DNA of 64,000 nucleotides from NCBI GenBank assembly GCA_964019335.1, contig OZ025733.1, positions 355,049 to 419,048 on the forward strand, written 5' to 3'. Both the position numbers and the translations under genes were made by a program. Under the pieces are notes generated by a model. That model was not told the DNA's origin and ran no database searches. It saw only the letters and a program-made list of their open reading frames with translations. Origin of the DNA: Diplonema japonicum. Its lineage: Eukaryota; Protista; Euglenozoa: Diplonemea. Shown piece after piece: positions 45,515 to 51,483 of this stretch. Position 1 is the first letter of the stretch, and each line of letters starts with the position of its first letter.

Positions 45515-45605
45515 TTTCATGCCTGCTGCCTTTACCAGGGCATGCTGCATTATTGCGCTTTTTCTTTTTTTTTTTTCACCTTACCAATTCTTACTGTAAC
45601 ACAGG

Positions 45606-45851
45606 ATGGACACAGAATGGACCGGACATACAGGGTTCAGCCAGTCGCAGCAAGGTTCGAGCACAGAAAGAGCTGCTGAAGCTGCAGGAAAACTGTCCGC
45701 CAACGATATTGAAGGCATGGATGCGGTGCTGAGAAACTACGCCGGGTGCGAAAGAAGCCAGCGCATACTGGTAGAGCCCTTAGGACACACGTCTCTAACA
45801 GCTACGTTGACCGAGTATATTGTGAAGAAGCGCAACAGCGCTAGCACGTAG
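45606..45851 (+). CDS. Small hypothetical protein (81 aa)
   Basis: ATG directly after a pyrimidine tract and CAG acceptor-like site; coding-like composition; same strand as neighbouring genes. Confidence 0.45.
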   Translation: MDTEWTGHTGFSQSQQGSSTERAAEAAGKLSANDIEGMDAVLRNYAGCERSQRILVEPLGHTSLTATLTEYIVKKRNSAST

Positions 45852-45942
45852 ATTTATATTATTCGTCTCCCGTGTCTCACTTTATTGCACATTCACTTTA
45901 CAGGCTTTTACACTTATTCTTCTACAAAAGAAACAAACAAAA

Positions 45943-48900
45943 ATGTCTGACCGTAAGGAAAAGGCGTTGTTCTGCTACACGAACGCTACTCGCGGCGACC
46001 TCATTGTGAAGTGGCTCGTTGAGCAGGCTTATGAGGTGGTGGGACTTGTGGTGGATGTCGGCGGGCATGCAGACATCAGTAGAGTGTCGAAGGAACTCAA
46101 GGAAATGGGGTGCAACCAGGTCATTATCGAAGACATGAGGTGCTCCTTCATCACGGAGTTTGTGTACCCTGCTGTTCAAGCAAAGTGTGCGTTGGGAGTA
46201 CCTTTAAGCGCCCCTTGCGTCGCAAAGATGCAAATGCAGGTTGCAGCTCGGGAAGGCATCAGCACCGTTGTCCATGGAGTTCGGGGTGACGTGCAGATCC
46301 AATTCGAGCTTGTCTATTACGCCCTGCAACCCCAGATCACGGTCATCACCCCTTGGCGTGACTCTGCCTTCGTGGCTGCTGCCGAGACGCAAGGCGTTCC
46401 CGTGTCGCCGTCTGCAGAGCACCACTACGACGGGATCACCGACCTAGACCTGCAGTATCTCAACGATGTTGACAGTGGAACGCCCACGCCCGACCTCGAG
46501 CCCGAGACCATAAGCATCGAGTTTAAGAATGGGATCCCTGTGAAGATAATCTCGCTGACAGGCACTCACGAAGGCACCATCCACACGAACCCTTTGGACA
46601 TTTTCTCTTTCTTGAACGAGATCGGCACGGAGCACGGGGTGGGCATCATCGACAGGATCGAAGACTTCGAGCTCACCGTGAAGGGCAAGATCACCGTTGC
46701 ATCACCGGGGCACACAATCCTTGCCGTGGCGCACACCGACATTGAGGGCATCACCATGGACAGGGAGGTCAGACGGTTGCGTGACATGCTGCAGTCTAAG
46801 TTCACTGCACTCGTGAAGGGCGGTTGCAGGTTCTCTCCAGAAATGGACTTTATCACAGCTGCAATAAACAAGTCACAGGAGTTCATTGACGGCATTGTGA
46901 CGCTGCAGGTGTGCGCCGGAAACGTCTTCCCAACATCACGCACATCGGAGAAAAGTCTTTTCGATAAGGAGCTCTCAAGCATGTCAATCTCTGACGCCGT
47001 CGACCCACAAGACGTTGAAGGGTTTATTAAGGTACACTCCATGAGGTTAAGCGCGCATCACGCGATCCTCACGAAGCACTCTCCGAAGGACCCTTCTAGG
47101 TGGCCCGCAGGAACGCTTACAATGAGCGATGGCAGCTCCTTCGAGGGGCGCGTGTTTGGGCAGCAGATATCCACGGCTGGTGAGGTTGTGTTCACCACGG
47201 GAATGGTGGGATATCCTGAGTCCCTCACCGATCCTTCATACCGCGGGCAGATCCTAGTCCTCACGTACCCCATGATCGGGAATTACGGCATCCCACCTAT
47301 GACGAAGGACTCGTATGGCATCATGGAGCACTTTGAAAGCTTCGGTGCTGAGATCCACGTTGCGGGGCTGATTGTGTCGGAGTACTGCGAGGAGCCGAGC
47401 CACTGGAATGCGTCGAGCAACCTGTCGCAGTGGTTGAAGTCGCAGAACATCCCTGCTATGATGATGGTGGATACACGTGCTTTGGTGAAGAAGATCCGCG
47501 AATCTGGAAGCCTTTTAGGAAAGATCACCTGCAACTACGACGTGGAGTTCAAAAACCCTAACCTAGTGAGTCTCACAAAGGAGGTGTCCCTGAAGCGCCC
47601 CATCACATATGGCAACGGGGACCTCACAATCCTGTGCATTGATATGGGTGTGAAGCTGAACACCATCCGTTTGTTCTTAAAGCATAACGTAACGCTGAAG
47701 GTGGTGCCGTGGGACTGGGATATTAGGAACGAGGAGTACGATGGACTCTTTATCTCGAACGGGCCCGGTGATCCGTCGCTGCTGCAGGCGACCATCGACA
47801 ACTTGAAATGGGCCATCCAGAGAGACACGCCGATCTTTGGCATCTGCATGGGAAACCTTGTGTTGGGACTGGCAGCAGGGGCAACGTCGTACAAGCTGAA
47901 GTACGGAAATAGAGGCCAGAACCAGCCTGTGATCAATCACATGACCAAAAAGTGCATTATCACGACACAGAACCACGGCTATGCCATTGATAACAATACT
48001 CTCCCCGATGACTGGGAGGTCTACTTCACCAACGCAAACGACAAGTCGAACGAAGGTATTAAGCACAAGACCAAGCCGTTCTTCAGCGTGCAGTTCCACC
48101 CCGAGGCGAGGTGCGGCCCCAACGACTCGGAGTACCTGTTCACCGACTTCATCGACAATGTTAGAGACTACAAGATCGAGTGTTACATCCTCAACAAGCC
48201 TCGCAAGGTGCTCGTTCTCGGCGCGGGTGGCATCACCATCGGACAGGCTGGCGAGTTCGACTACTCTGGCAGCCAATGTATCAAGTCCATCAAGGAGGAG
48301 GGCATCGAGACTGTGTTAATCAACCCTAACGTTGCCACCGTGCAGACGGCGGTGGGCCTTGCTGACCACATCTACTACACGCCCATCACAGTGCCGTACG
48401 TAGAGGACGTCATCAAGAAAGAGAAGCCCGACGGCATCATGCTGGGCTTTGGCGGACAGACAGCACTTAACTGCGGGCTTCAGCTTCAAAAGCAAGGCAT
48501 CCTCCGTAAGTACAACGTGCGCGTCCTCGGCACACCCACCAAAGCCATCGAGATCTCGGAGGACCGCGAGATGTTCGCAGAGACACTGAAGCAAATCCAC
48601 GAGAAGCTAGCTCCCTCGCAAGCAGTGTCCTCCATCGAGGAGGCAGTGGCAGCTGCGGCCACCATCAAGTACCCTGTCATGGTACGTGCAGCCTTTGCTC
48701 TGGGGGGGCTTGGGTCTGGTATTGTGAACAACGAAGAGGAGTTACGTACACTTGTTGCGAAGGCTCTTGCAAATTCACCTCAGGTGCTTGTCGAGAAGAG
48801 TGTGAAGGGGTGGAAGGAGGTGGAGTACGAGGTGGTAAGGGACGTACGTGACAACTGCATCACGGTGTGCAACATGGAAAACTTCGATCCTATGGGCGTG

Positions 48901-51483
48901 CATACCGGGGAAAGCATTGTAGTCGCCCCGTCGCAGACACTTACCAACGACGAGTATCACATGCTGCGCACAGCCTCCATCAAGATCATTAGGCACCTTG
49001 GTATCGTGGGCGAGTGCAACGTGCAGTACGGCCTTGACCCAGAGTCTATGGAGTATATCGTCATCGAGGTAAACGCCAGGCTCAGCAGATCGTCGGCCTT
49101 GGCCTCCAAGGCAACAGGGTACCCCTTAGCAGCAGTGGCCGCGAAGCTGGCCTTGGGTATTGAGCTCCCTGATGTTATCAACTCGGTGACGAAGGGTACC
49201 ACGGCGTGCTTCGAGCCGTCTTTGGACTATGTGGTGGTGAAGATGCCCAGATGGGACCTGTCCAAGTTCAACATGGTTTCTCAAAAGATCGGCTCTGTCA
49301 TGAAGTCTGTTGGTGAAGTCATGGCTATTGGGAGGTCTTTTCAAGAAGCTTTTCAAAAGGCAGTGCGCATGGCTGATCTGTCTTACAAGGGTTTCGACGA
49401 CAGGCATCTCAGCACCACCGATCTTGAACACCTGGAAGAAGAAATCAGGAATCCCACGCCGTTGCGTGTCTTCCACATCGCGAAGGCCCTCAAGCTGGGC
49501 GCCACAGTGTCGGACATCCACACGTGGTCTAACATAGATATTTGGTTTCTCGAGAAATTGAAGGACATCAGCATGCTGGGCACCTTTATTGAGGAAGAGT
49601 ATGGTTGCAAGCTGACGTCAATCCCCGCAACCACCATGTGGGAGCTCAAGGCTATGGGCTACTCGGACATCCAGATCGCTGAAAGGGTGGGTTCAACAGA
49701 GAAGCTTGTGCGAGAACGCAGGAAGTCTCTTGACGTGCTGCCGTTCGTGAAGCAGATCGACACTGTAGCTGGTGAGTTCCCTGCTGACACCAACGCCAAT
49801 TACTTGTACCTCACGTACAATGCCTCATTCGACGACATCAAGCCGAGCGACAACCCCGTTGCCGTCCTGGGCTCGGGAGTGTACAGGATTGGAAGCTCTG
49901 TCGAATTCGATTATTGCGGTGTGATGTGCCTCAGGAACCTGCATTCTTTGGGACACAAGACAGTTATGATCAACAGCAACCCCGAGACCGTTTCCACCGA
50001 CTACGATGAGTCTGACAGGCTGTACTTCGAGGAGCTGTCGCTGGAGAGAATTCTTGACATCTGTGACAAAGAGACACCCAGCGGAGTTGTAGTGTCAGTA
50101 GGAGGTCAGATTTCGCAGAACTTGGCTATGCCCCTGCAGCTCAGCTCAGTGAACGTGCTAGGCACAGACCCGTTGATGATCGACCAGGCTGAGGACAGGT
50201 CAAAGTTCAGCACGCTGTGCGACGAGATTGGAGTTGATCAGCCGAGGTGGTCCTCGCTTACCAGTGTGAGCGAGGCCGCTGCCTTCTGCTCTCAGATTGG
50301 GTACCCCGTGTTGCTCCGCCCCTCGTACGTGCTGTCAGGTAGCGCGATGAACGTCGTGTGGCGCGAGGAAGACCTCTCCACTCTACTCGAAGAGGCAGCT
50401 GCCGTCAGCACGGAGCATCCTGTCGTCATCTCAAAGTACCACACGGACAGCATGGAGCTGGACGTCGACGTCGTTGCCGACCAAGGCACCCTCGTGACGT
50501 GGGCCGTTTCACAGCACTTGGAAAATGCTGGTGTCCACAGTGGTGACGCTACTATGGTGTTGCCGCCGCTCCTTAAGTCTGAGGACGTGGAAACCGTGAG
50601 ACAGGCAACGGAAAGACTGGCAGCGAAGCTACGTGTGAGCGGCCCTATGAATGTACAATATCTCCGCCTCCCCGACGGCTCTGTGAAAGTGATCGAGGCT
50701 AACGTAAGGTGCAGCAGGAGTGTGCCGTTCGTGTCGAAAACAACGGGTGTTGACTTCTGCAGAAAGATGGTGGAGGTTTTGACAAGGCCTTTTGTTAGTG
50801 GCACAGTCGTGGAGGCGATTGACATGGTGGCTATGCGCCGTGGGCATATGGGTGTGAAGGCGCCAATGTTCTCGTTCTTGAGGCTGACAGGCGCCGACCC
50901 TATACTTGGGGTGGAGATGTCTTCTACTGGTGAGGTAGCGTGCTTCGGCCATGATTTTGACGAGGTGTTCCTGAAGGCCATGCTGTGTGCAGGGTTCAGG
51001 ATGCCTAAGAGGAACGTCTACGTGAACATCGAGTCTGCTGACTTGCATGACGAGTTTTTCCCTAGTGTGGTTGCCCTGGCAAAGTGCTACGAGCTCTTTG
51101 CGTCACCAGAGACAGCCAAGTACCTCATGAGCAAGGGCGTCAGCAGCACTGTGCTTGCGAACCCACGTGACCGTGCTTCATCCCACACGAGTTACCTTGA
51201 GGCGATCGAGAGGCGAATCTTGCACATGGTCGTAAACCTGAGAGACCCGTGTCTTGATTGGCAGCTAAAGGCAGCGACTCCCGAAACTGTGCAAGACGGG
51301 TATCTCATCAGAAGGAACGCCATCGACTTCAATGTTCCTTTGCTGACTAACTTACAAATCGCCACCCACGTGGCAAGGTATGAGAAGGAGGAAGTAAAGA
51401 AAAAAACAATCATATACCCCAACAGAGTGATCACAAAACCGTGCGGGCTGGACATTAGCTCTTACAATTCGTATTTTGCTTGA
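45943..51483 (+). CDS. Glutamine-dependent carbamoyl-phosphate synthetase (fused GATase and synthetase) with an N-terminal degenerate argininosuccinate-synthase domain; probable 48-nt intron 51378-51425
   Basis: aa ~1-375 align with ASS. The GATase part has GEVVFTTGMVGYPESLTDPSY, SNGPGDP, GICMG and QFHPE. The large subunit has IGQAGEFDYSG, NMENFDPMGVHTGES, IEVNARLSRSSALASKATGYPLA, RPSYVLSG and an MGS-like tail. No DHOase or ATCase domain. Confidence 0.95.
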   Translation: MSDRKEKALFCYTNATRGDLIVKWLVEQAYEVVGLVVDVGGHADISRVSKELKEMGCNQVIIEDMRCSFITEFVYPAVQAKCALGVPLSAPCVAKMQMQVAAREGISTVVHGVRGDVQIQFELVYYALQPQITVITPWRDSAFVAAAETQGVPVSPSAEHHYDGITDLDLQYLNDVDSGTPTPDLEPETISIEFKNGIPVKIISLTGTHEGTIHTNPLDIFSFLNEIGTEHGVGIIDRIEDFELTVKGKITVASPGHTILAVAHTDIEGITMDREVRRLRDMLQSKFTALVKGGCRFSPEMDFITAAINKSQEFIDGIVTLQVCAGNVFPTSRTSEKSLFDKELSSMSISDAVDPQDVEGFIKVHSMRLSAHHAILTKHSPKDPSRWPAGTLTMSDGSSFEGRVFGQQISTAGEVVFTTGMVGYPESLTDPSYRGQILVLTYPMIGNYGIPPMTKDSYGIMEHFESFGAEIHVAGLIVSEYCEEPSHWNASSNLSQWLKSQNIPAMMMVDTRALVKKIRESGSLLGKITCNYDVEFKNPNLVSLTKEVSLKRPITYGNGDLTILCIDMGVKLNTIRLFLKHNVTLKVVPWDWDIRNEEYDGLFISNGPGDPSLLQATIDNLKWAIQRDTPIFGICMGNLVLGLAAGATSYKLKYGNRGQNQPVINHMTKKCIITTQNHGYAIDNNTLPDDWEVYFTNANDKSNEGIKHKTKPFFSVQFHPEARCGPNDSEYLFTDFIDNVRDYKIECYILNKPRKVLVLGAGGITIGQAGEFDYSGSQCIKSIKEEGIETVLINPNVATVQTAVGLADHIYYTPITVPYVEDVIKKEKPDGIMLGFGGQTALNCGLQLQKQGILRKYNVRVLGTPTKAIEISEDREMFAETLKQIHEKLAPSQAVSSIEEAVAAAATIKYPVMVRAAFALGGLGSGIVNNEEELRTLVAKALANSPQVLVEKSVKGWKEVEYEVVRDVRDNCITVCNMENFDPMGVHTGESIVVAPSQTLTNDEYHMLRTASIKIIRHLGIVGECNVQYGLDPESMEYIVIEVNARLSRSSALASKATGYPLAAVAAKLALGIELPDVINSVTKGTTACFEPSLDYVVVKMPRWDLSKFNMVSQKIGSVMKSVGEVMAIGRSFQEAFQKAVRMADLSYKGFDDRHLSTTDLEHLEEEIRNPTPLRVFHIAKALKLGATVSDIHTWSNIDIWFLEKLKDISMLGTFIEEEYGCKLTSIPATTMWELKAMGYSDIQIAERVGSTEKLVRERRKSLDVLPFVKQIDTVAGEFPADTNANYLYLTYNASFDDIKPSDNPVAVLGSGVYRIGSSVEFDYCGVMCLRNLHSLGHKTVMINSNPETVSTDYDESDRLYFEELSLERILDICDKETPSGVVVSVGGQISQNLAMPLQLSSVNVLGTDPLMIDQAEDRSKFSTLCDEIGVDQPRWSSLTSVSEAAAFCSQIGYPVLLRPSYVLSGSAMNVVWREEDLSTLLEEAAAVSTEHPVVISKYHTDSMELDVDVVADQGTLVTWAVSQHLENAGVHSGDATMVLPPLLKSEDVETVRQATERLAAKLRVSGPMNVQYLRLPDGSVKVIEANVRCSRSVPFVSKTTGVDFCRKMVEVLTRPFVSGTVVEAIDMVAMRRGHMGVKAPMFSFLRLTGADPILGVEMSSTGEVACFGHDFDEVFLKAMLCAGFRMPKRNVYVNIESADLHDEFFPSVVALAKCYELFASPETAKYLMSKGVSSTVLANPRDRASSHTSYLEAIERRILHMVVNLRDPCLDWQLKAATPETVQDGYLIRRNAIDFNVPLLTNLQIATHVARYEKEEVKKKTIIYPNRVITKPCGLDISSYNSYFA

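What the first reader, a model, noticed from the sequence alone, without database searches (positions are those of the whole stretch)
45943..51483. Carbamoyl-phosphate synthetase fused to a pseudo-argininosuccinate synthase
Seen: one ORF joins a ~375-aa ASS-fold domain to an intact GATase (Cys in GICMG, His-Pro-Glu) and a CPS large subunit. Known: ASS needs the PP-loop AYSGGLDTS, the aspartate loop HGATGKGNDQVRFE and citrulline-binding motifs (S.DEN...SYE, K.RGIYETP). Here these read CYTNATRGD, HGVRGDVQIQFE, apparently deleted, and KGKITVASP. The C-terminal oligomerisation helices are well preserved (TMDREVR...FSPE...KSQE...SLFDKELSSM...GFIKVHSMRL). The usual eukaryotic CPS fusions are C-terminal (CAD/URA2). 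Inference: a dead ASS domain reused as a tetramerisation scaffold, as a docking module that co-assembles CPS with active ASS into an arginine-pathway metabolon, or as an allosteric sensor partitioning carbamoyl phosphate between arginine and pyrimidine synthesis. I cannot tell whether this architecture is already present, unremarked, in other euglenozoans.
Basis: partly seen in the sequence, partly recalled or inferred. Interest (0 to 1): 0.88.

Follow-up and report, generated by a model that had tools for sequence, protein, structure and literature searches.

The report
Dead ASS domain fused to CPS
In the marine protist Diplonema japonicum, the enzyme that makes carbamoyl phosphate carries at its front end a catalytically dead copy of argininosuccinate synthase that keeps the residues known to hold that enzyme's four subunits together; trypanosomes and Leishmania carry a second, independently acquired dead copy at the back end, so it looks like a repeatedly recruited assembly module that I found described nowhere.

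Summary
Window 45943-51483 (+) is one gene of Diplonema japonicum, a diplonemid. It encodes an ASS-like domain (residues 1-378), a short conserved linker, then an intact glutamine-dependent CPS. One correction: a 48-nt GT..AG intron (51378-51425) is spliced out, so the protein has 1830 residues, not 1846.

The ASS-like domain has the ASS fold (1vl2, E 1e-80; model TM 0.74). It has lost the PP-loop and 8 of 9 aspartate/citrulline contacts, partly through deletions shared by all six orthologues. All eight checkable residues that a human ASS1 study names as probable subunit contacts are identical in all six.

The same N-terminal fusion occurs in four named diplonemids, one unnamed contig and the prokinetoplastid PhM-4. 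Trypanosoma, Leishmania and bodonids instead carry a more degenerate ASS-like domain at the C-terminus. It derives from a different ASS paralogue; a single origin is rejected (AU p = 4e-6). So there were two independent captures, or a replacement.

The genome also holds an intact ASS, OTC, ASL and a second, unfused CPS.

An oligomerisation scaffold is the best-supported function. A canonical substrate sensor, and docking to the intact ASS, are disfavoured. I found no description in the searchable literature.

The parts
45943..51483 (+). Whole gene from ATG to stop: ASS-like domain, linker, GATase and CPS. The ORF has 1846 codons read through the intron; the mature protein has 1830 residues.
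   Evidence: transcript model P0001 is identical apart from the intron
45943..46371 (+). ASS-like nucleotide-binding subdomain (residues 1-143). The PP-loop AYSGGLDTS reads CYTNATRGD. A 6-residue deletion removes the Tyr87 equivalent. HGATGKGNDQVRFE reads HGV--RGDVQIQFE.
   Evidence: Pfam PF00764, 80 bits; alignments
46372..46497 (+). Degenerate middle stretch (residues 144-185) that replaces the S.DEN...H.S.E.G substrate loops. It is shortened and only 14-42% identical among orthologues. Model confidence is below 50 for residues 157-179.
46498..46968 (+). ASS-like synthetase subdomain (residues 186-342). It is the best conserved ASS part: 44 positions are invariant in all six N-type domains and in at least 11 of 12 real ASS. 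It holds contact residues D237, D266, R274, E275, E300, F303 and R333. The citrulline Tyr282 equivalent is Val.
   Evidence: Pfam PF20979, 146 bits
46969..47076 (+). Extended loop and C-terminal ASS helix (residues 343-378), including the Arg398 equivalent R368. The model gives a helix at 358-378.
   Evidence: domain definition from PMC13289927
47077..47115 (+). Short Pro-rich linker HSPKDPSRWPAGT (residues 379-391). The core KH[ST]P[KR]xP[ST]RWP is conserved in diplonemids and PhM-4. There is no stop or conserved Met at the junction.
47116..48156 (+). CPS small-chain part: CPSase_sm_chain (residues 392-528) and class-I GATase (565-738), with Cys in GICMG and the His-Pro-Glu motif.
48202..51348 (+). 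CPS large-chain part (residues 754-1802): two preATP-grasp/ATP-grasp halves, an oligomerisation domain (1166-1247) and an MGS-like allosteric domain (1715-1802).
   Evidence: same clade as kinetoplastid CPSII in the CPS tree
51378..51425 (+). 48-nt in-frame GT..AG intron with 25 of 48 bases A, absent from the transcript model.
   Evidence: a contig of a near relative stops at 51377; typical D. japonicum intron (PMC12621601)
45603..45855 (+). Not part of the gene. A separate small upstream mRNA: spliced-leader acceptor AG at 45603-45604, an 81-codon ORF at 45606-45851, and a contig that ends at 45855. This bounds the CPS 5' UTR to 45856-45942.
   Evidence: SL-joined contig and a 252-nt contig in RNA run X7; sequence; no Pfam match

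Best explanation
The gene encodes one polypeptide. A catalytically dead but structurally intact short-type argininosuccinate synthase (ASS) domain is joined by a short, conserved Pro-rich linker to a complete glutamine-dependent carbamoyl-phosphate synthetase (CPS). This CPS falls in the same clade as kinetoplastid CPSII (pyr1).

The dead domain cannot adenylate citrulline or bind aspartate. It has kept the residues through which ASS subunits are thought to form their dimer-of-dimers tetramer. It therefore most likely acts as a homo-oligomerisation core that holds CPS protomers in a fixed assembly. This resembles the inactive dihydroorotase-like module in some pyrimidine-pathway complexes.

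The fusion predates the split of diplonemids and kinetoplastids. In Metakinetoplastina (bodonids, Trypanosoma, Leishmania) it was lost. A second dead ASS domain, derived from a different, bacterial-like ASS paralogue, sits at the C-terminus instead.

Shown: the architecture, loss of the catalytic residues, conservation, the phylogenetic distribution and the two origins. Inferred: the oligomerisation role.
For: One polypeptide. The ORF is continuous. The species' own spliced transcript model runs from Met1 to the stop. Transcript models from D. ambulator, Flectonema, Artemidia and PhM-4, and one gene model on an unnamed ENA contig (P0003), have the same architecture. The linker is conserved.

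Dead. PP-loop, Y87, T119, N123, D124, R127, S189, E191 and Y282 are lost; only E270 is kept (residue list from PMC13289927). The domain scores below the NCBIfam equivalog cut-offs, 229.7 against 334 and 209 against 268.2.

Fold kept. 1vl2 E 1e-80. AF2 model pLDDT 76, TM 0.74 to 1vl2 and 2nz2.

Contact residues kept. D267, D296, R304, E305, E330, F333, R363 and R398 are identical in 6 of 6 domains.

Selection. 74 positions are invariant in all six domains and in real ASS, 44 of them in the synthetase subdomain. The ASS C-subdomain is 49-77% identical among orthologues, at or above the CPS allosteric domain at 24-61%. Against a roughly 97%-identical relative there are 5 synonymous and 1 non-synonymous differences in the ASS part.

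Two origins. N-type domains score 278-321 bits against short-type ASS and 66-93 against L003. C-type domains score 161-229 against L003 and 65-106 against short-type ASS. In the ML tree each type is monophyletic (100/99 and 100/100) in a different ASS clade. The AU test rejects one clade, delta lnL 153, p = 3.8e-6.

Same CPS clade as kinetoplastid CPSII: support 100.
Against: No oligomeric state was measured or modelled; no multimer prediction was available. The contact residues are also invariant in active ASS. Their retention could reflect fold stability: R363-D296 is proposed as an intramolecular contact too. That paper words the contact roles as likely, not demonstrated.

The C-terminal domain of Metakinetoplastina lacks the ASS C-terminal helix and ends in a different conserved tail. 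The two dead domains may therefore not act identically.

No RNA read or contig was laid across the domain junction (one search left 46441-47812 uncovered). The single-mRNA claim rests on transcriptome assemblies and conservation.

The ancestral-fusion inference depends on the PhM-4 transcript being truly prokinetoplastid. The CPS tree was a quick search and leaves PhM-4 in an open fork.
Confidence: 0.55

Rival explanations
1. Hetero-oligomer docking module. The dead domain co-assembles with a free short-type ASS subunit, tying carbamoyl-phosphate synthesis physically to an ASS-family partner. In this genome that partner would be the paralogue L001 on contig C38.
For: L001 is the sister of the N-type clade (92/99). 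It carries the same residues at all eight contact positions. It passes the NCBIfam ASS cut-offs. The genome has OTC and ASL, so an arginine pathway exists.
Against: L001 is itself degenerate: PP-loop SGGLVGV, Tyr282 equivalent Leu. The only intact ASS (L003) matches the short-type residue at only 1 of the 8 contact positions. The L001 sister relation joins two long branches. The analogous C-type domain persists in kinetoplastids that cannot convert citrulline to arginine (PMC7052976).
Confidence: 0.15
2. Platform for a non-covalent CAD-like complex. The dead ASS domain recruits the separately encoded aspartate carbamoyltransferase and dihydroorotase to CPSII.
For: In T. cruzi, CPSII co-immunoprecipitates ATCase and DHOase although the three are separate proteins (review PMC5803862). 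These CPS proteins lack the ATCase and DHOase domains that organise CAD. Two independent captures imply a strong selective benefit.
Against: Nothing here bears on binding. No N-type-specific conserved surface patch was identified beyond 10 derived invariant positions. This reading is compatible with, rather than exclusive of, the oligomerisation scaffold.
Confidence: 0.15
3. Allosteric sensor. The former ASS pocket binds a metabolite such as Asp, citrulline, Arg or a nucleotide, and tunes CPS activity.
For: The domain sits directly upstream of the GATase through a conserved, probably rigid linker. Pseudoenzyme domains often become ligand sensors (general knowledge).
Against: The ATP, citrulline and aspartate contacts are lost apart from G117 and E270, and even those are not conserved among the six orthologues. 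The substrate loops are deleted, 14-42% identical among orthologues and modelled with low confidence. The CPS keeps its own MGS-like allosteric domain.
Confidence: 0.08
4. Two proteins or a non-functional relic. Either an internal trans-splice site yields separate ASS-like and CPS products, or the domain is a decaying remnant with no role.
For: No RNA contig was laid over 46441-47812. A shorter D. ambulator isoform model exists (P0005).
Against: P0005 starts at Met438, inside the CPSase small-chain domain, so it is a 5'-truncated model. Full-length transcript models exist in five taxa. The linker and 74 positions are invariant across the diplonemid-prokinetoplastid divergence. The differences from a close relative are mostly synonymous.
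Confidence: 0.04

Closest known systems
Kinetoplastid CPSII (pyr1 of Trypanosoma cruzi, T. brucei, Leishmania donovani)
   Same: Same CPS clade (support 100). GATase and CPS are fused and there are no ATCase or DHOase domains. These proteins also carry a dead ASS-like domain, total length about 1830-1850 residues.
   Different: There the ASS-like domain is C-terminal (about residues 1465-1800) and much more degenerate (Pfam 28-47 bits). It lacks the ASS C-terminal helix and descends from a different, bacterial-like ASS paralogue, sister to D. japonicum L003. The accessible reviews describe these enzymes as GATase plus CPS only.
CAD (animals) and URA2 (fungi) multi-enzyme CPS fusions
   Same: A eukaryotic glutamine-dependent CPS fused to further pathway-related domains. 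In URA2 the dihydroorotase-like domain is catalytically inactive and structural (my own knowledge, not tested here). That makes it the closest functional analogue of a dead enzyme used as an architectural module.
   Different: Here there are no ATCase or DHOase domains. The extra domain is N-terminal. It comes from the arginine pathway, not the pyrimidine pathway.
Canonical short-type argininosuccinate synthase (Thermotoga TM1780 1vl2, human ASS1 2nz2)
   Same: Same fold and domain order: nucleotide-binding subdomain, synthetase subdomain, C-terminal helix. About 40% identity. The probable contact residues are identical.
   Different: The PP-loop and substrate contacts are lost, substrate loops are deleted, the score is below the equivalog cut-offs, and the domain is covalently attached to CPS.
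Bacterial ATCase complexes that need an inactive dihydroorotase homologue (PyrC' of Pseudomonas)
   Same: A dead enzyme homologue kept only for assembly of a carbamoyl-phosphate-using enzyme (my own knowledge, not tested here).
   Different: That partner is a separate subunit, from a different fold and in a different host enzyme.

Membership tests
Argininosuccinate synthase (EC 6.3.4.5; Pfam PF00764 + PF20979) | Homology and fold: nucleotide-binding, synthetase and C-terminal-helix parts | tested here: met
   Pfam 80 and 146 bits; 1vl2 E 1e-80; Foldseek TM 0.74 to 1vl2 and 2nz2
Argininosuccinate synthase (EC 6.3.4.5; Pfam PF00764 + PF20979) | PP-loop ATP-pyrophosphatase motif (A-Y-S-G-G-L-D-T-S) | tested here: not met
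   It reads C-Y-T-N-A-T-R-G-D. No N-type orthologue keeps it.
Argininosuccinate synthase (EC 6.3.4.5; Pfam PF00764 + PF20979) | Citrulline and aspartate contacts (human Y87, T119, N123, D124, R127, S189, E191, E270, Y282; list from PMC13289927) | tested here: not met
   Only E270 is kept in the window protein. Y87, T119, S189 and E191 fall in deletions. N123 is D, D124 is V, R127 is Q, Y282 is V.
Argininosuccinate synthase (EC 6.3.4.5; Pfam PF00764 + PF20979) | Score above the curated equivalog cut-offs (NCBIfam NF001770, TIGR00032) | tested here: not met
   229.7 against 334 and 209 against 268.2. L001 and L003 from the same genome pass.
Argininosuccinate synthase (EC 6.3.4.5; Pfam PF00764 + PF20979) | Homotetramer (dimer of dimers) | not testable with these tools
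   The eight probable contact residues are identical in 6 of 6 N-type domains. No multimer model or measurement was possible.
Glutamine-dependent carbamoyl-phosphate synthetase (CPSII type) | CPSase small chain plus class-I GATase with the catalytic Cys and the His-Pro-Glu motif | tested here: met
   PF00988 164 bits and PF00117 172 bits; GICMG and HPE in the translation
Glutamine-dependent carbamoyl-phosphate synthetase (CPSII type) | Two ATP-grasp synthetase halves, an oligomerisation domain and an MGS-like allosteric domain | tested here: met
   PF02786 371 bits in 2 stretches, PF25596 in 2 stretches, PF02787, PF02142
Glutamine-dependent carbamoyl-phosphate synthetase (CPSII type) | Same clade as the genetically defined pyrimidine CPSII of kinetoplastids | tested here: met
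   One clade, support 100, in the CPS tree, a quick search. The genome's second CPS and the Euglena CPS lie in the other clade.
Glutamine-dependent carbamoyl-phosphate synthetase (CPSII type) | Supplies the pyrimidine rather than the arginine pathway in this organism | not testable with these tools
   Two CPS genes, OTC, ASL and an intact ASS are all present. The division of labour is unknown.
CAD / URA2 fusion | ATCase and (pseudo)DHOase domains C-terminal to the CPS | tested here: not met
   No PF00185, PF02729 or PF01979. The protein ends after the MGS-like domain.
Pseudoenzyme scaffold domain (functional class, not a sequence family) | Catalytic residues lost, fold kept, purifying selection maintained | tested here: met
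Pseudoenzyme scaffold domain (functional class, not a sequence family) | Required for assembly or activity of the host enzyme | not testable with these tools
   Needs deletion and complementation, and biophysics.

The most novel reading that the evidence does not exclude
CPSII captured a dead argininosuccinate synthase twice, from two different ASS paralogues and at opposite ends, in sister lineages. This would imply that an ASS-fold oligomer is an obligatory assembly core of the euglenozoan pyrimidine CPS. The C-terminal version would then be a parasite-specific, host-absent structural module in an enzyme reported to be needed for normal growth of T. cruzi amastigotes. The pattern might also record an ancestral physical CPS-ASS partnership at the arginine/pyrimidine branch point.
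Probability: 0.35. Interest if true: 0.85.

Novelty: new variant of a known kind. Interest (0 to 1): 0.74.

Why it matters
CPS sits at the branch between arginine and pyrimidine synthesis. How eukaryotes organise it, in CAD, URA2 or separate enzymes, is a classic case of pathway fusion. Here a third solution appears: an arginine-pathway enzyme stripped of catalysis and welded to the CPS. It is conserved across diplonemids, which are among the most diverse marine eukaryotes. An independent version occurs in all sampled trypanosomatids.

Two independent captures are strong comparative evidence that the ASS fold does something useful for CPS. That makes the function directly testable by domain deletion in Leishmania or T. 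brucei CPS complementation, by SEC-MALS and by cryo-EM.

The host CAD protein lacks any such domain, so the kinetoplastid version would be a parasite-specific feature of the pathway's first enzyme.

It also corrects metabolic reconstructions. A Pfam ASS hit in these genomes need not mean ASS activity.

Tried and rejected
1. I first took the organism for a kinetoplastid. All large ORFs lie on one strand, and the spliced-leader 3' part CAGTTTCTGTACTTTATTG has 251 copies in the genome. An exact transcript match to EukProt Diplonema japonicum corrected this.

2. I first labelled L003 and the C-type domains 'E. coli-type'. The PDB search shows L003 about equally distant from 5us8/1k92 and from 1vl2. 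It is 61-64% identical to Myxococcota, Kiritimatiellota and Verrucomicrobiota ASS. I now call it 'bacterial-like L003-type'.

3. RNA evidence across the junction. The single read-laying run gave no contig over 46441-47812. The DNA runs that hold the stretch also showed nothing there, because a filter drops some records, so a hole proves nothing. X7 proved to be RNA, with an SL-joined contig and a spliced CPS2 contig. It covered only the upstream small gene and the paralogue.

4. The shorter D. ambulator isoform P0005 was considered as evidence for a separate CPS product. It was rejected because it begins inside the CPSase small-chain domain.

5. Gene neighbourhood: no pathway genes nearby, only a Peptidase_M23 protein, a PDZ protein and unannotated ORFs.

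I used per-domain identities and 24 differences from a near relative instead.

7. Literature: ten full-text searches found no description of an ASS-like domain on any CPS. The primary kinetoplastid CPSII papers I tried to open (Nara et al. 2000 and Wilson et al. 2012) are not held; earlier ones such as Gao et al. 1999 I did not try. Prior mention there cannot be excluded.

8. The spliced protein model was never sent joined to any search tool. The two exons were checked separately against P0001.
Full report
**What is there**

Window 45943-51483 (+) is one open reading frame of 1846 codons. Pfam finds, in order:
- Arginosuc_synth, residues 18-143, 80 bits
- Arginosuc_syn_C, residues 186-369, 146 bits
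- CPSase_sm_chain, residues 392-528
- GATase, residues 565-738
- two preATP-grasp/ATP-grasp halves of the CPS large chain (PF02786, 371 bits)
- the CPS oligomerisation domain, residues 1166-1247
- an MGS-like allosteric domain, residues 1715-1802

The first 385 residues match solved ASS structures at E 1.1e-80 (Thermotoga 1vl2) and 2.7e-70 (human 2nz2). An AlphaFold model of them has pLDDT 76 and pTM 0.74. Its best PDB matches are ASS structures at TM 0.74.

**Organism and gene model**

All large ORFs of the window lie on the + strand, and the genome holds 251 copies of the spliced-leader 3' part. I first read this as kinetoplastid.

The protein is identical to a EukProt transcript model of Diplonema japonicum, P0001 = EP01064. 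The genome (62.5 Mb) fits the published D. japonicum YPF1604 assembly of 62.3 Mb (PMC13598402). So this is a diplonemid.

P0001 is 16 residues shorter than the ORF. The missing stretch is a 48-nt, in-frame, A-rich intron, GTATGAG...CAACAG, at 51378-51425. I checked the two exons separately against P0001, without joining them. Exon 1 gives residues 1-1811. The split codon AG|A gives Arg1812. Exon 2 gives the remainder. Such introns are typical of this species: median 41 nt, 98% GT-AG, A-rich tract (PMC12621601). The D. ambulator orthologue also lacks the 16 residues. The mature protein has 1830 residues.

**One protein or two?**

Evidence for one protein:
- The spliced transcript model spans Met1 to the stop.
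- Transcript models of D. ambulator (P0123), Flectonema neradi (P0002), Artemidia motanka (P0004/P0122) and Prokinetoplastina sp. PhM-4 (P0008), plus an unnamed 583-kb ENA contig (P0003), have the same N-terminal architecture.
- The ASS C-terminal helix runs through a conserved Pro-rich linker, KH[ST]P[KR]xP[ST]RWP, straight into the first strand of the CPS small chain in all six. There is no conserved Met at the junction.
- A shorter D. ambulator isoform (P0005) begins at Met438, inside the CPSase small-chain domain. It is a 5'-truncated model.

Nothing was laid on 46441-47812, and the tool warns that a filter drops some records.

The call did show that run X7 is RNA. An SL-joined contig marks an acceptor at 45603/45604. 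A 252-nt contig covers 45604-45855. This is a separate small mRNA with an 81-codon ORF. It confines the CPS 5' UTR to 45856-45942.

**The ASS part is dead**

The contact residues of human ASS are listed in PMC13289927. I mapped them through the HMMER alignment and my multiple alignment.

| Human ASS feature | Window protein |
|---|---|
| PP-loop AYSGGLDTS | CYTNATRGD |
| Tyr87 | removed by a 6-residue deletion |
| Thr119 | removed by a 2-residue deletion |
| Asn123 | Asp |
| Asp124 | Val |
| Arg127 | Gln |
| Ser189, Glu191 | in a deleted stretch |
| Tyr282 | Val |
| Glu270 | kept |

The two deletions and Asn123-to-Asp are shared by all six N-terminal domains, so the loss happened once, before they diverged.

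The domain scores below both NCBIfam ASS equivalog cut-offs: 229.7 against 334, and 209 against 268.2. The genome's other two ASS homologues pass.

The model's low-confidence segments are 157-179, 237-252 and 343-354. The first two are the former substrate loops.

**It is nevertheless conserved**

The human ASS1 study names residues that probably contribute to dimer or tetramer formation: D267, D296, R304, E305, E330, F333, R363 and R398. All eight are identical in all six N-terminal domains. C337 is Ala, as it is in the real short-type ASS checked.

Seventy-four positions are invariant both in the six domains and in at least 11 of 12 real ASS. Forty-four of them lie in the synthetase subdomain. 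Forty-five positions invariant in real ASS are lost, including the ligand contacts.

Identity to the window protein, by region:

| Region (residues) | D. ambulator | Flectonema | P0003 | Artemidia | PhM-4 |
|---|---|---|---|---|---|
| ASS C-subdomain (186-375) | 77% | 68% | 64% | 60% | 49% |
| CPS oligomerisation domain | 77% | 59% | 66% | 43% | 55% |
| MGS-like allosteric domain | 61% | 49% | 46% | 24% | 35% |
| Former substrate-loop stretch (144-185) | 42% | 14% | 19% | 29% | 16% |

Contigs from a roughly 97%-identical relative (run X1) differ from the window at 24 listed positions. In the ASS part, 5 are synonymous and 1 is not. In the CPS part, 13 are synonymous and 5 are not.

This is selective retention of fold and subunit contacts with abandonment of the active site.

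**Distribution and origin**

A search of the CPS part across the 5.8-billion-protein collection showed an unexpected pattern. CPS proteins of Trypanosoma, Leishmania, Leptomonas, Strigomonas, Phytomonas, Herpetomonas, Parabodo and Neobodo also carry precomputed ASS Pfam hits. Yet they begin directly with the CPS small chain.

Pfam places their ASS-like domain at the C-terminus, about residues 1465-1800, with weak scores of 28-47 bits. It lacks the ASS C-terminal helix and ends in a conserved tail...EEVFQPGNGSFSDVQW.

The two kinds of domain come from different ASS paralogues:

| blastp bit scores | vs short-type ASS | vs L003 (intact ASS of this genome) |
|---|---|---|
| N-terminal domains | 278-321 | 66-93 |
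| C-terminal domains | 65-106 | 161-229 |

In a careful ML tree:
- The N-type is monophyletic (100/99) inside short-type ASS. It is sister to the D. japonicum paralogue L001 (92/99), but both branches are long.
- The C-type is monophyletic (100/100) and sister to L003 (99/94).
- That pair nests among Myxococcota, Kiritimatiellota and Verrucomicrobiota ASS, which are 61-64% identical to L003.

Forcing all dead domains into one clade costs 153 log-likelihood units (AU p = 3.8e-6). I named this group after seeing the blast result, which weakens the formal test.

The CPS parts of both kinds form a single clade with support 100 (quick tree). The genome's second CPS and the Euglena CPS lie outside it.

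The simplest reading has two steps. An N-terminal dead short-type ASS was present in the common ancestor of diplonemids and kinetoplastids. It was lost after Prokinetoplastina branched off, and a dead L003-type ASS was captured at the other end in Metakinetoplastina.

Related proteins without any ASS domain:
- Unfused environmental relatives (P0009-P0012) end exactly where the C-type domain begins.
- P0024 starts ...SPLRWPVAELVL, which looks like a remnant of the N-type linker.
- Their organisms are unknown.

An exhaustive phmmer search of 1.84 billion representatives found only two proteins over 1000 residues among the best 150 matches, both diplonemid fusions. No free-standing protein was closer than ordinary ASS at 41% identity or less. 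Short fragments of 143-270 residues reach 49-58% identity over the C-subdomain.

**Context in this genome**

Three loci match the ASS C-domain:
- the fusion itself
- L003 on C9, with all motifs intact (SGGLDS, HGATGRGNDQMRFE, KSRGVYEAPG)
- L001 on C38, a short-type paralogue with PP-loop SGGLVGV and KCRRVLECPAG, so partly degenerate

OTC (333 bits) and ASL (586 bits) are present.

A second, unfused CPS lies on C9. It is 55% identical to the window CPS, has several small introns, and corresponds to transcript P0063. It is expressed in run X7.

So the organism needs carbamoyl phosphate for both pathways and has two CPS enzymes. Only the one in the kinetoplastid CPSII clade carries the dead ASS. 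Which pathway each enzyme feeds cannot be decided here.

**Function**

The best-supported mechanism is that the domain keeps ASS-type self-association and so fixes the quaternary structure of CPS. I put this at about 0.55.

It is inferred from the differential conservation, the rigid conserved linker, and the fact that these CPS proteins lack the ATCase and DHOase domains that organise CAD.

The weaknesses:
- No oligomeric state was measured or modelled.
- Contact residues can also be fold residues.
- The cited paper words these contact roles as likely, not demonstrated.
- The C-type domain lacks the C-terminal helix.

The rivals:
- **Co-assembly with L001.** L001 has the same contact residues, so this is possible.
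- **Co-assembly with the intact ASS L003.** This is unlikely. L003 matches the short-type residue at only 1 of the 8 contact positions. Most kinetoplastids with the C-type domain cannot make arginine from citrulline (PMC7052976).
- **Recruitment of ATCase and DHOase.** T. cruzi CPSII co-precipitates both (PMC5803862). This is compatible with the scaffold idea.
- **A sensor using the old pocket.** This is disfavoured by the loss and poor conservation of that pocket.
- **Separate proteins or a relic.** Both are disfavoured by the evidence above.

**Novelty**

The domain hits exist as precomputed Pfam annotations. I found no description in ten full-text searches.
- A 2018 review describes Leishmania CPSII as GATase plus CPS.
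- A 2020 comparative study of euglenozoan metabolism lists CPS, ATCase and DHOase as separate genes, without comment on CPS architecture.

The primary kinetoplastid CPSII papers I tried to open are not held, so earlier mention cannot be excluded.

In kind, this is a new variant of a known theme: CPS multi-domain fusions, and dead enzymes used as architectural modules. The independent second capture is the surprising element.

**Limits**

- The PhM-4 assignment rests on the EukProt label.
- The CPS tree was a quick search, and Artemidia is a long, compositionally odd branch in it.

Noticed in passing
window 51378-51425: A 48-nt, in-frame, A-rich GT..AG intron with 25 of 48 bases A. It has no stop codon, so the ORF reads straight through it and any ORF-based model gains 16 false residues. 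This fits the published A-rich short introns of D. japonicum.
   Followed up: yes
window 45603-45855: A separate small mRNA between the PDZ-domain gene and the CPS gene. The spliced-leader acceptor AG is at 45603-45604, after a long T-tract. An 81-codon ORF at 45606-45851 has no Pfam match. A 252-nt contig has depth about 173 in RNA run X7.
   Followed up: partly
L001:1312-2730 (-) = G000:C38, about 6943-8361: A third ASS homologue of 472 residues, short-type. It is sister to the fused dead domain in the tree, though both branches are long. It passes the NCBIfam ASS cut-offs. Its PP-loop reads SGGLVGV, with the Asp, Thr and Ser replaced. The Tyr282 equivalent is Leu. It has extensions of about 50 residues at each end. 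It may be a second pseudo-ASS or a partner of the fused domain.
   Followed up: partly
L010:2539-7300 = G000:C9, about 585538-590299: A second, unfused CPS gene, 55% identical to the window CPS and split by several small frame-changing introns. Its transcript is P0063 (1495 residues). It groups with Plasmodiophora and chlorarachniophyte CPS rather than with kinetoplastid CPSII. It is expressed in run X7.
   Followed up: partly
G000, many contigs (one search list): The spliced-leader 3' part CAGTTTCTGTACTTTATTG occurs 251 times. Many copies lie within a few kb of contig ends, mostly on the minus strand near contig starts and the plus strand near contig ends. This suggests subtelomeric SL-RNA genes or SL-derived repeats.
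   Followed up: no
P0024 (unnamed Logan/ENA protein, 33-kb contig), N-terminus: An unfused CPSII relative, sister to the C-type clade. It starts MSRKPSSALEIIGELPERSPLRWPVAELVL. The SP.RWP motif matches the linker that follows the N-terminal dead ASS domain in diplonemids. This may be a remnant of a lost domain, or an upstream exon missed by the gene model.
   Followed up: no
L003:925-2190 (+) = G000:C9, about 688458-689723: The only intact ASS of the genome is 61-64% identical to ASS of Myxococcota, Kiritimatiellota and Verrucomicrobiota and nests among them in the tree. This is consistent with a bacterial origin of the euglenozoan active ASS. It is also the closest relative of the dead C-terminal domain of kinetoplastid CPSII.
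   Followed up: partly
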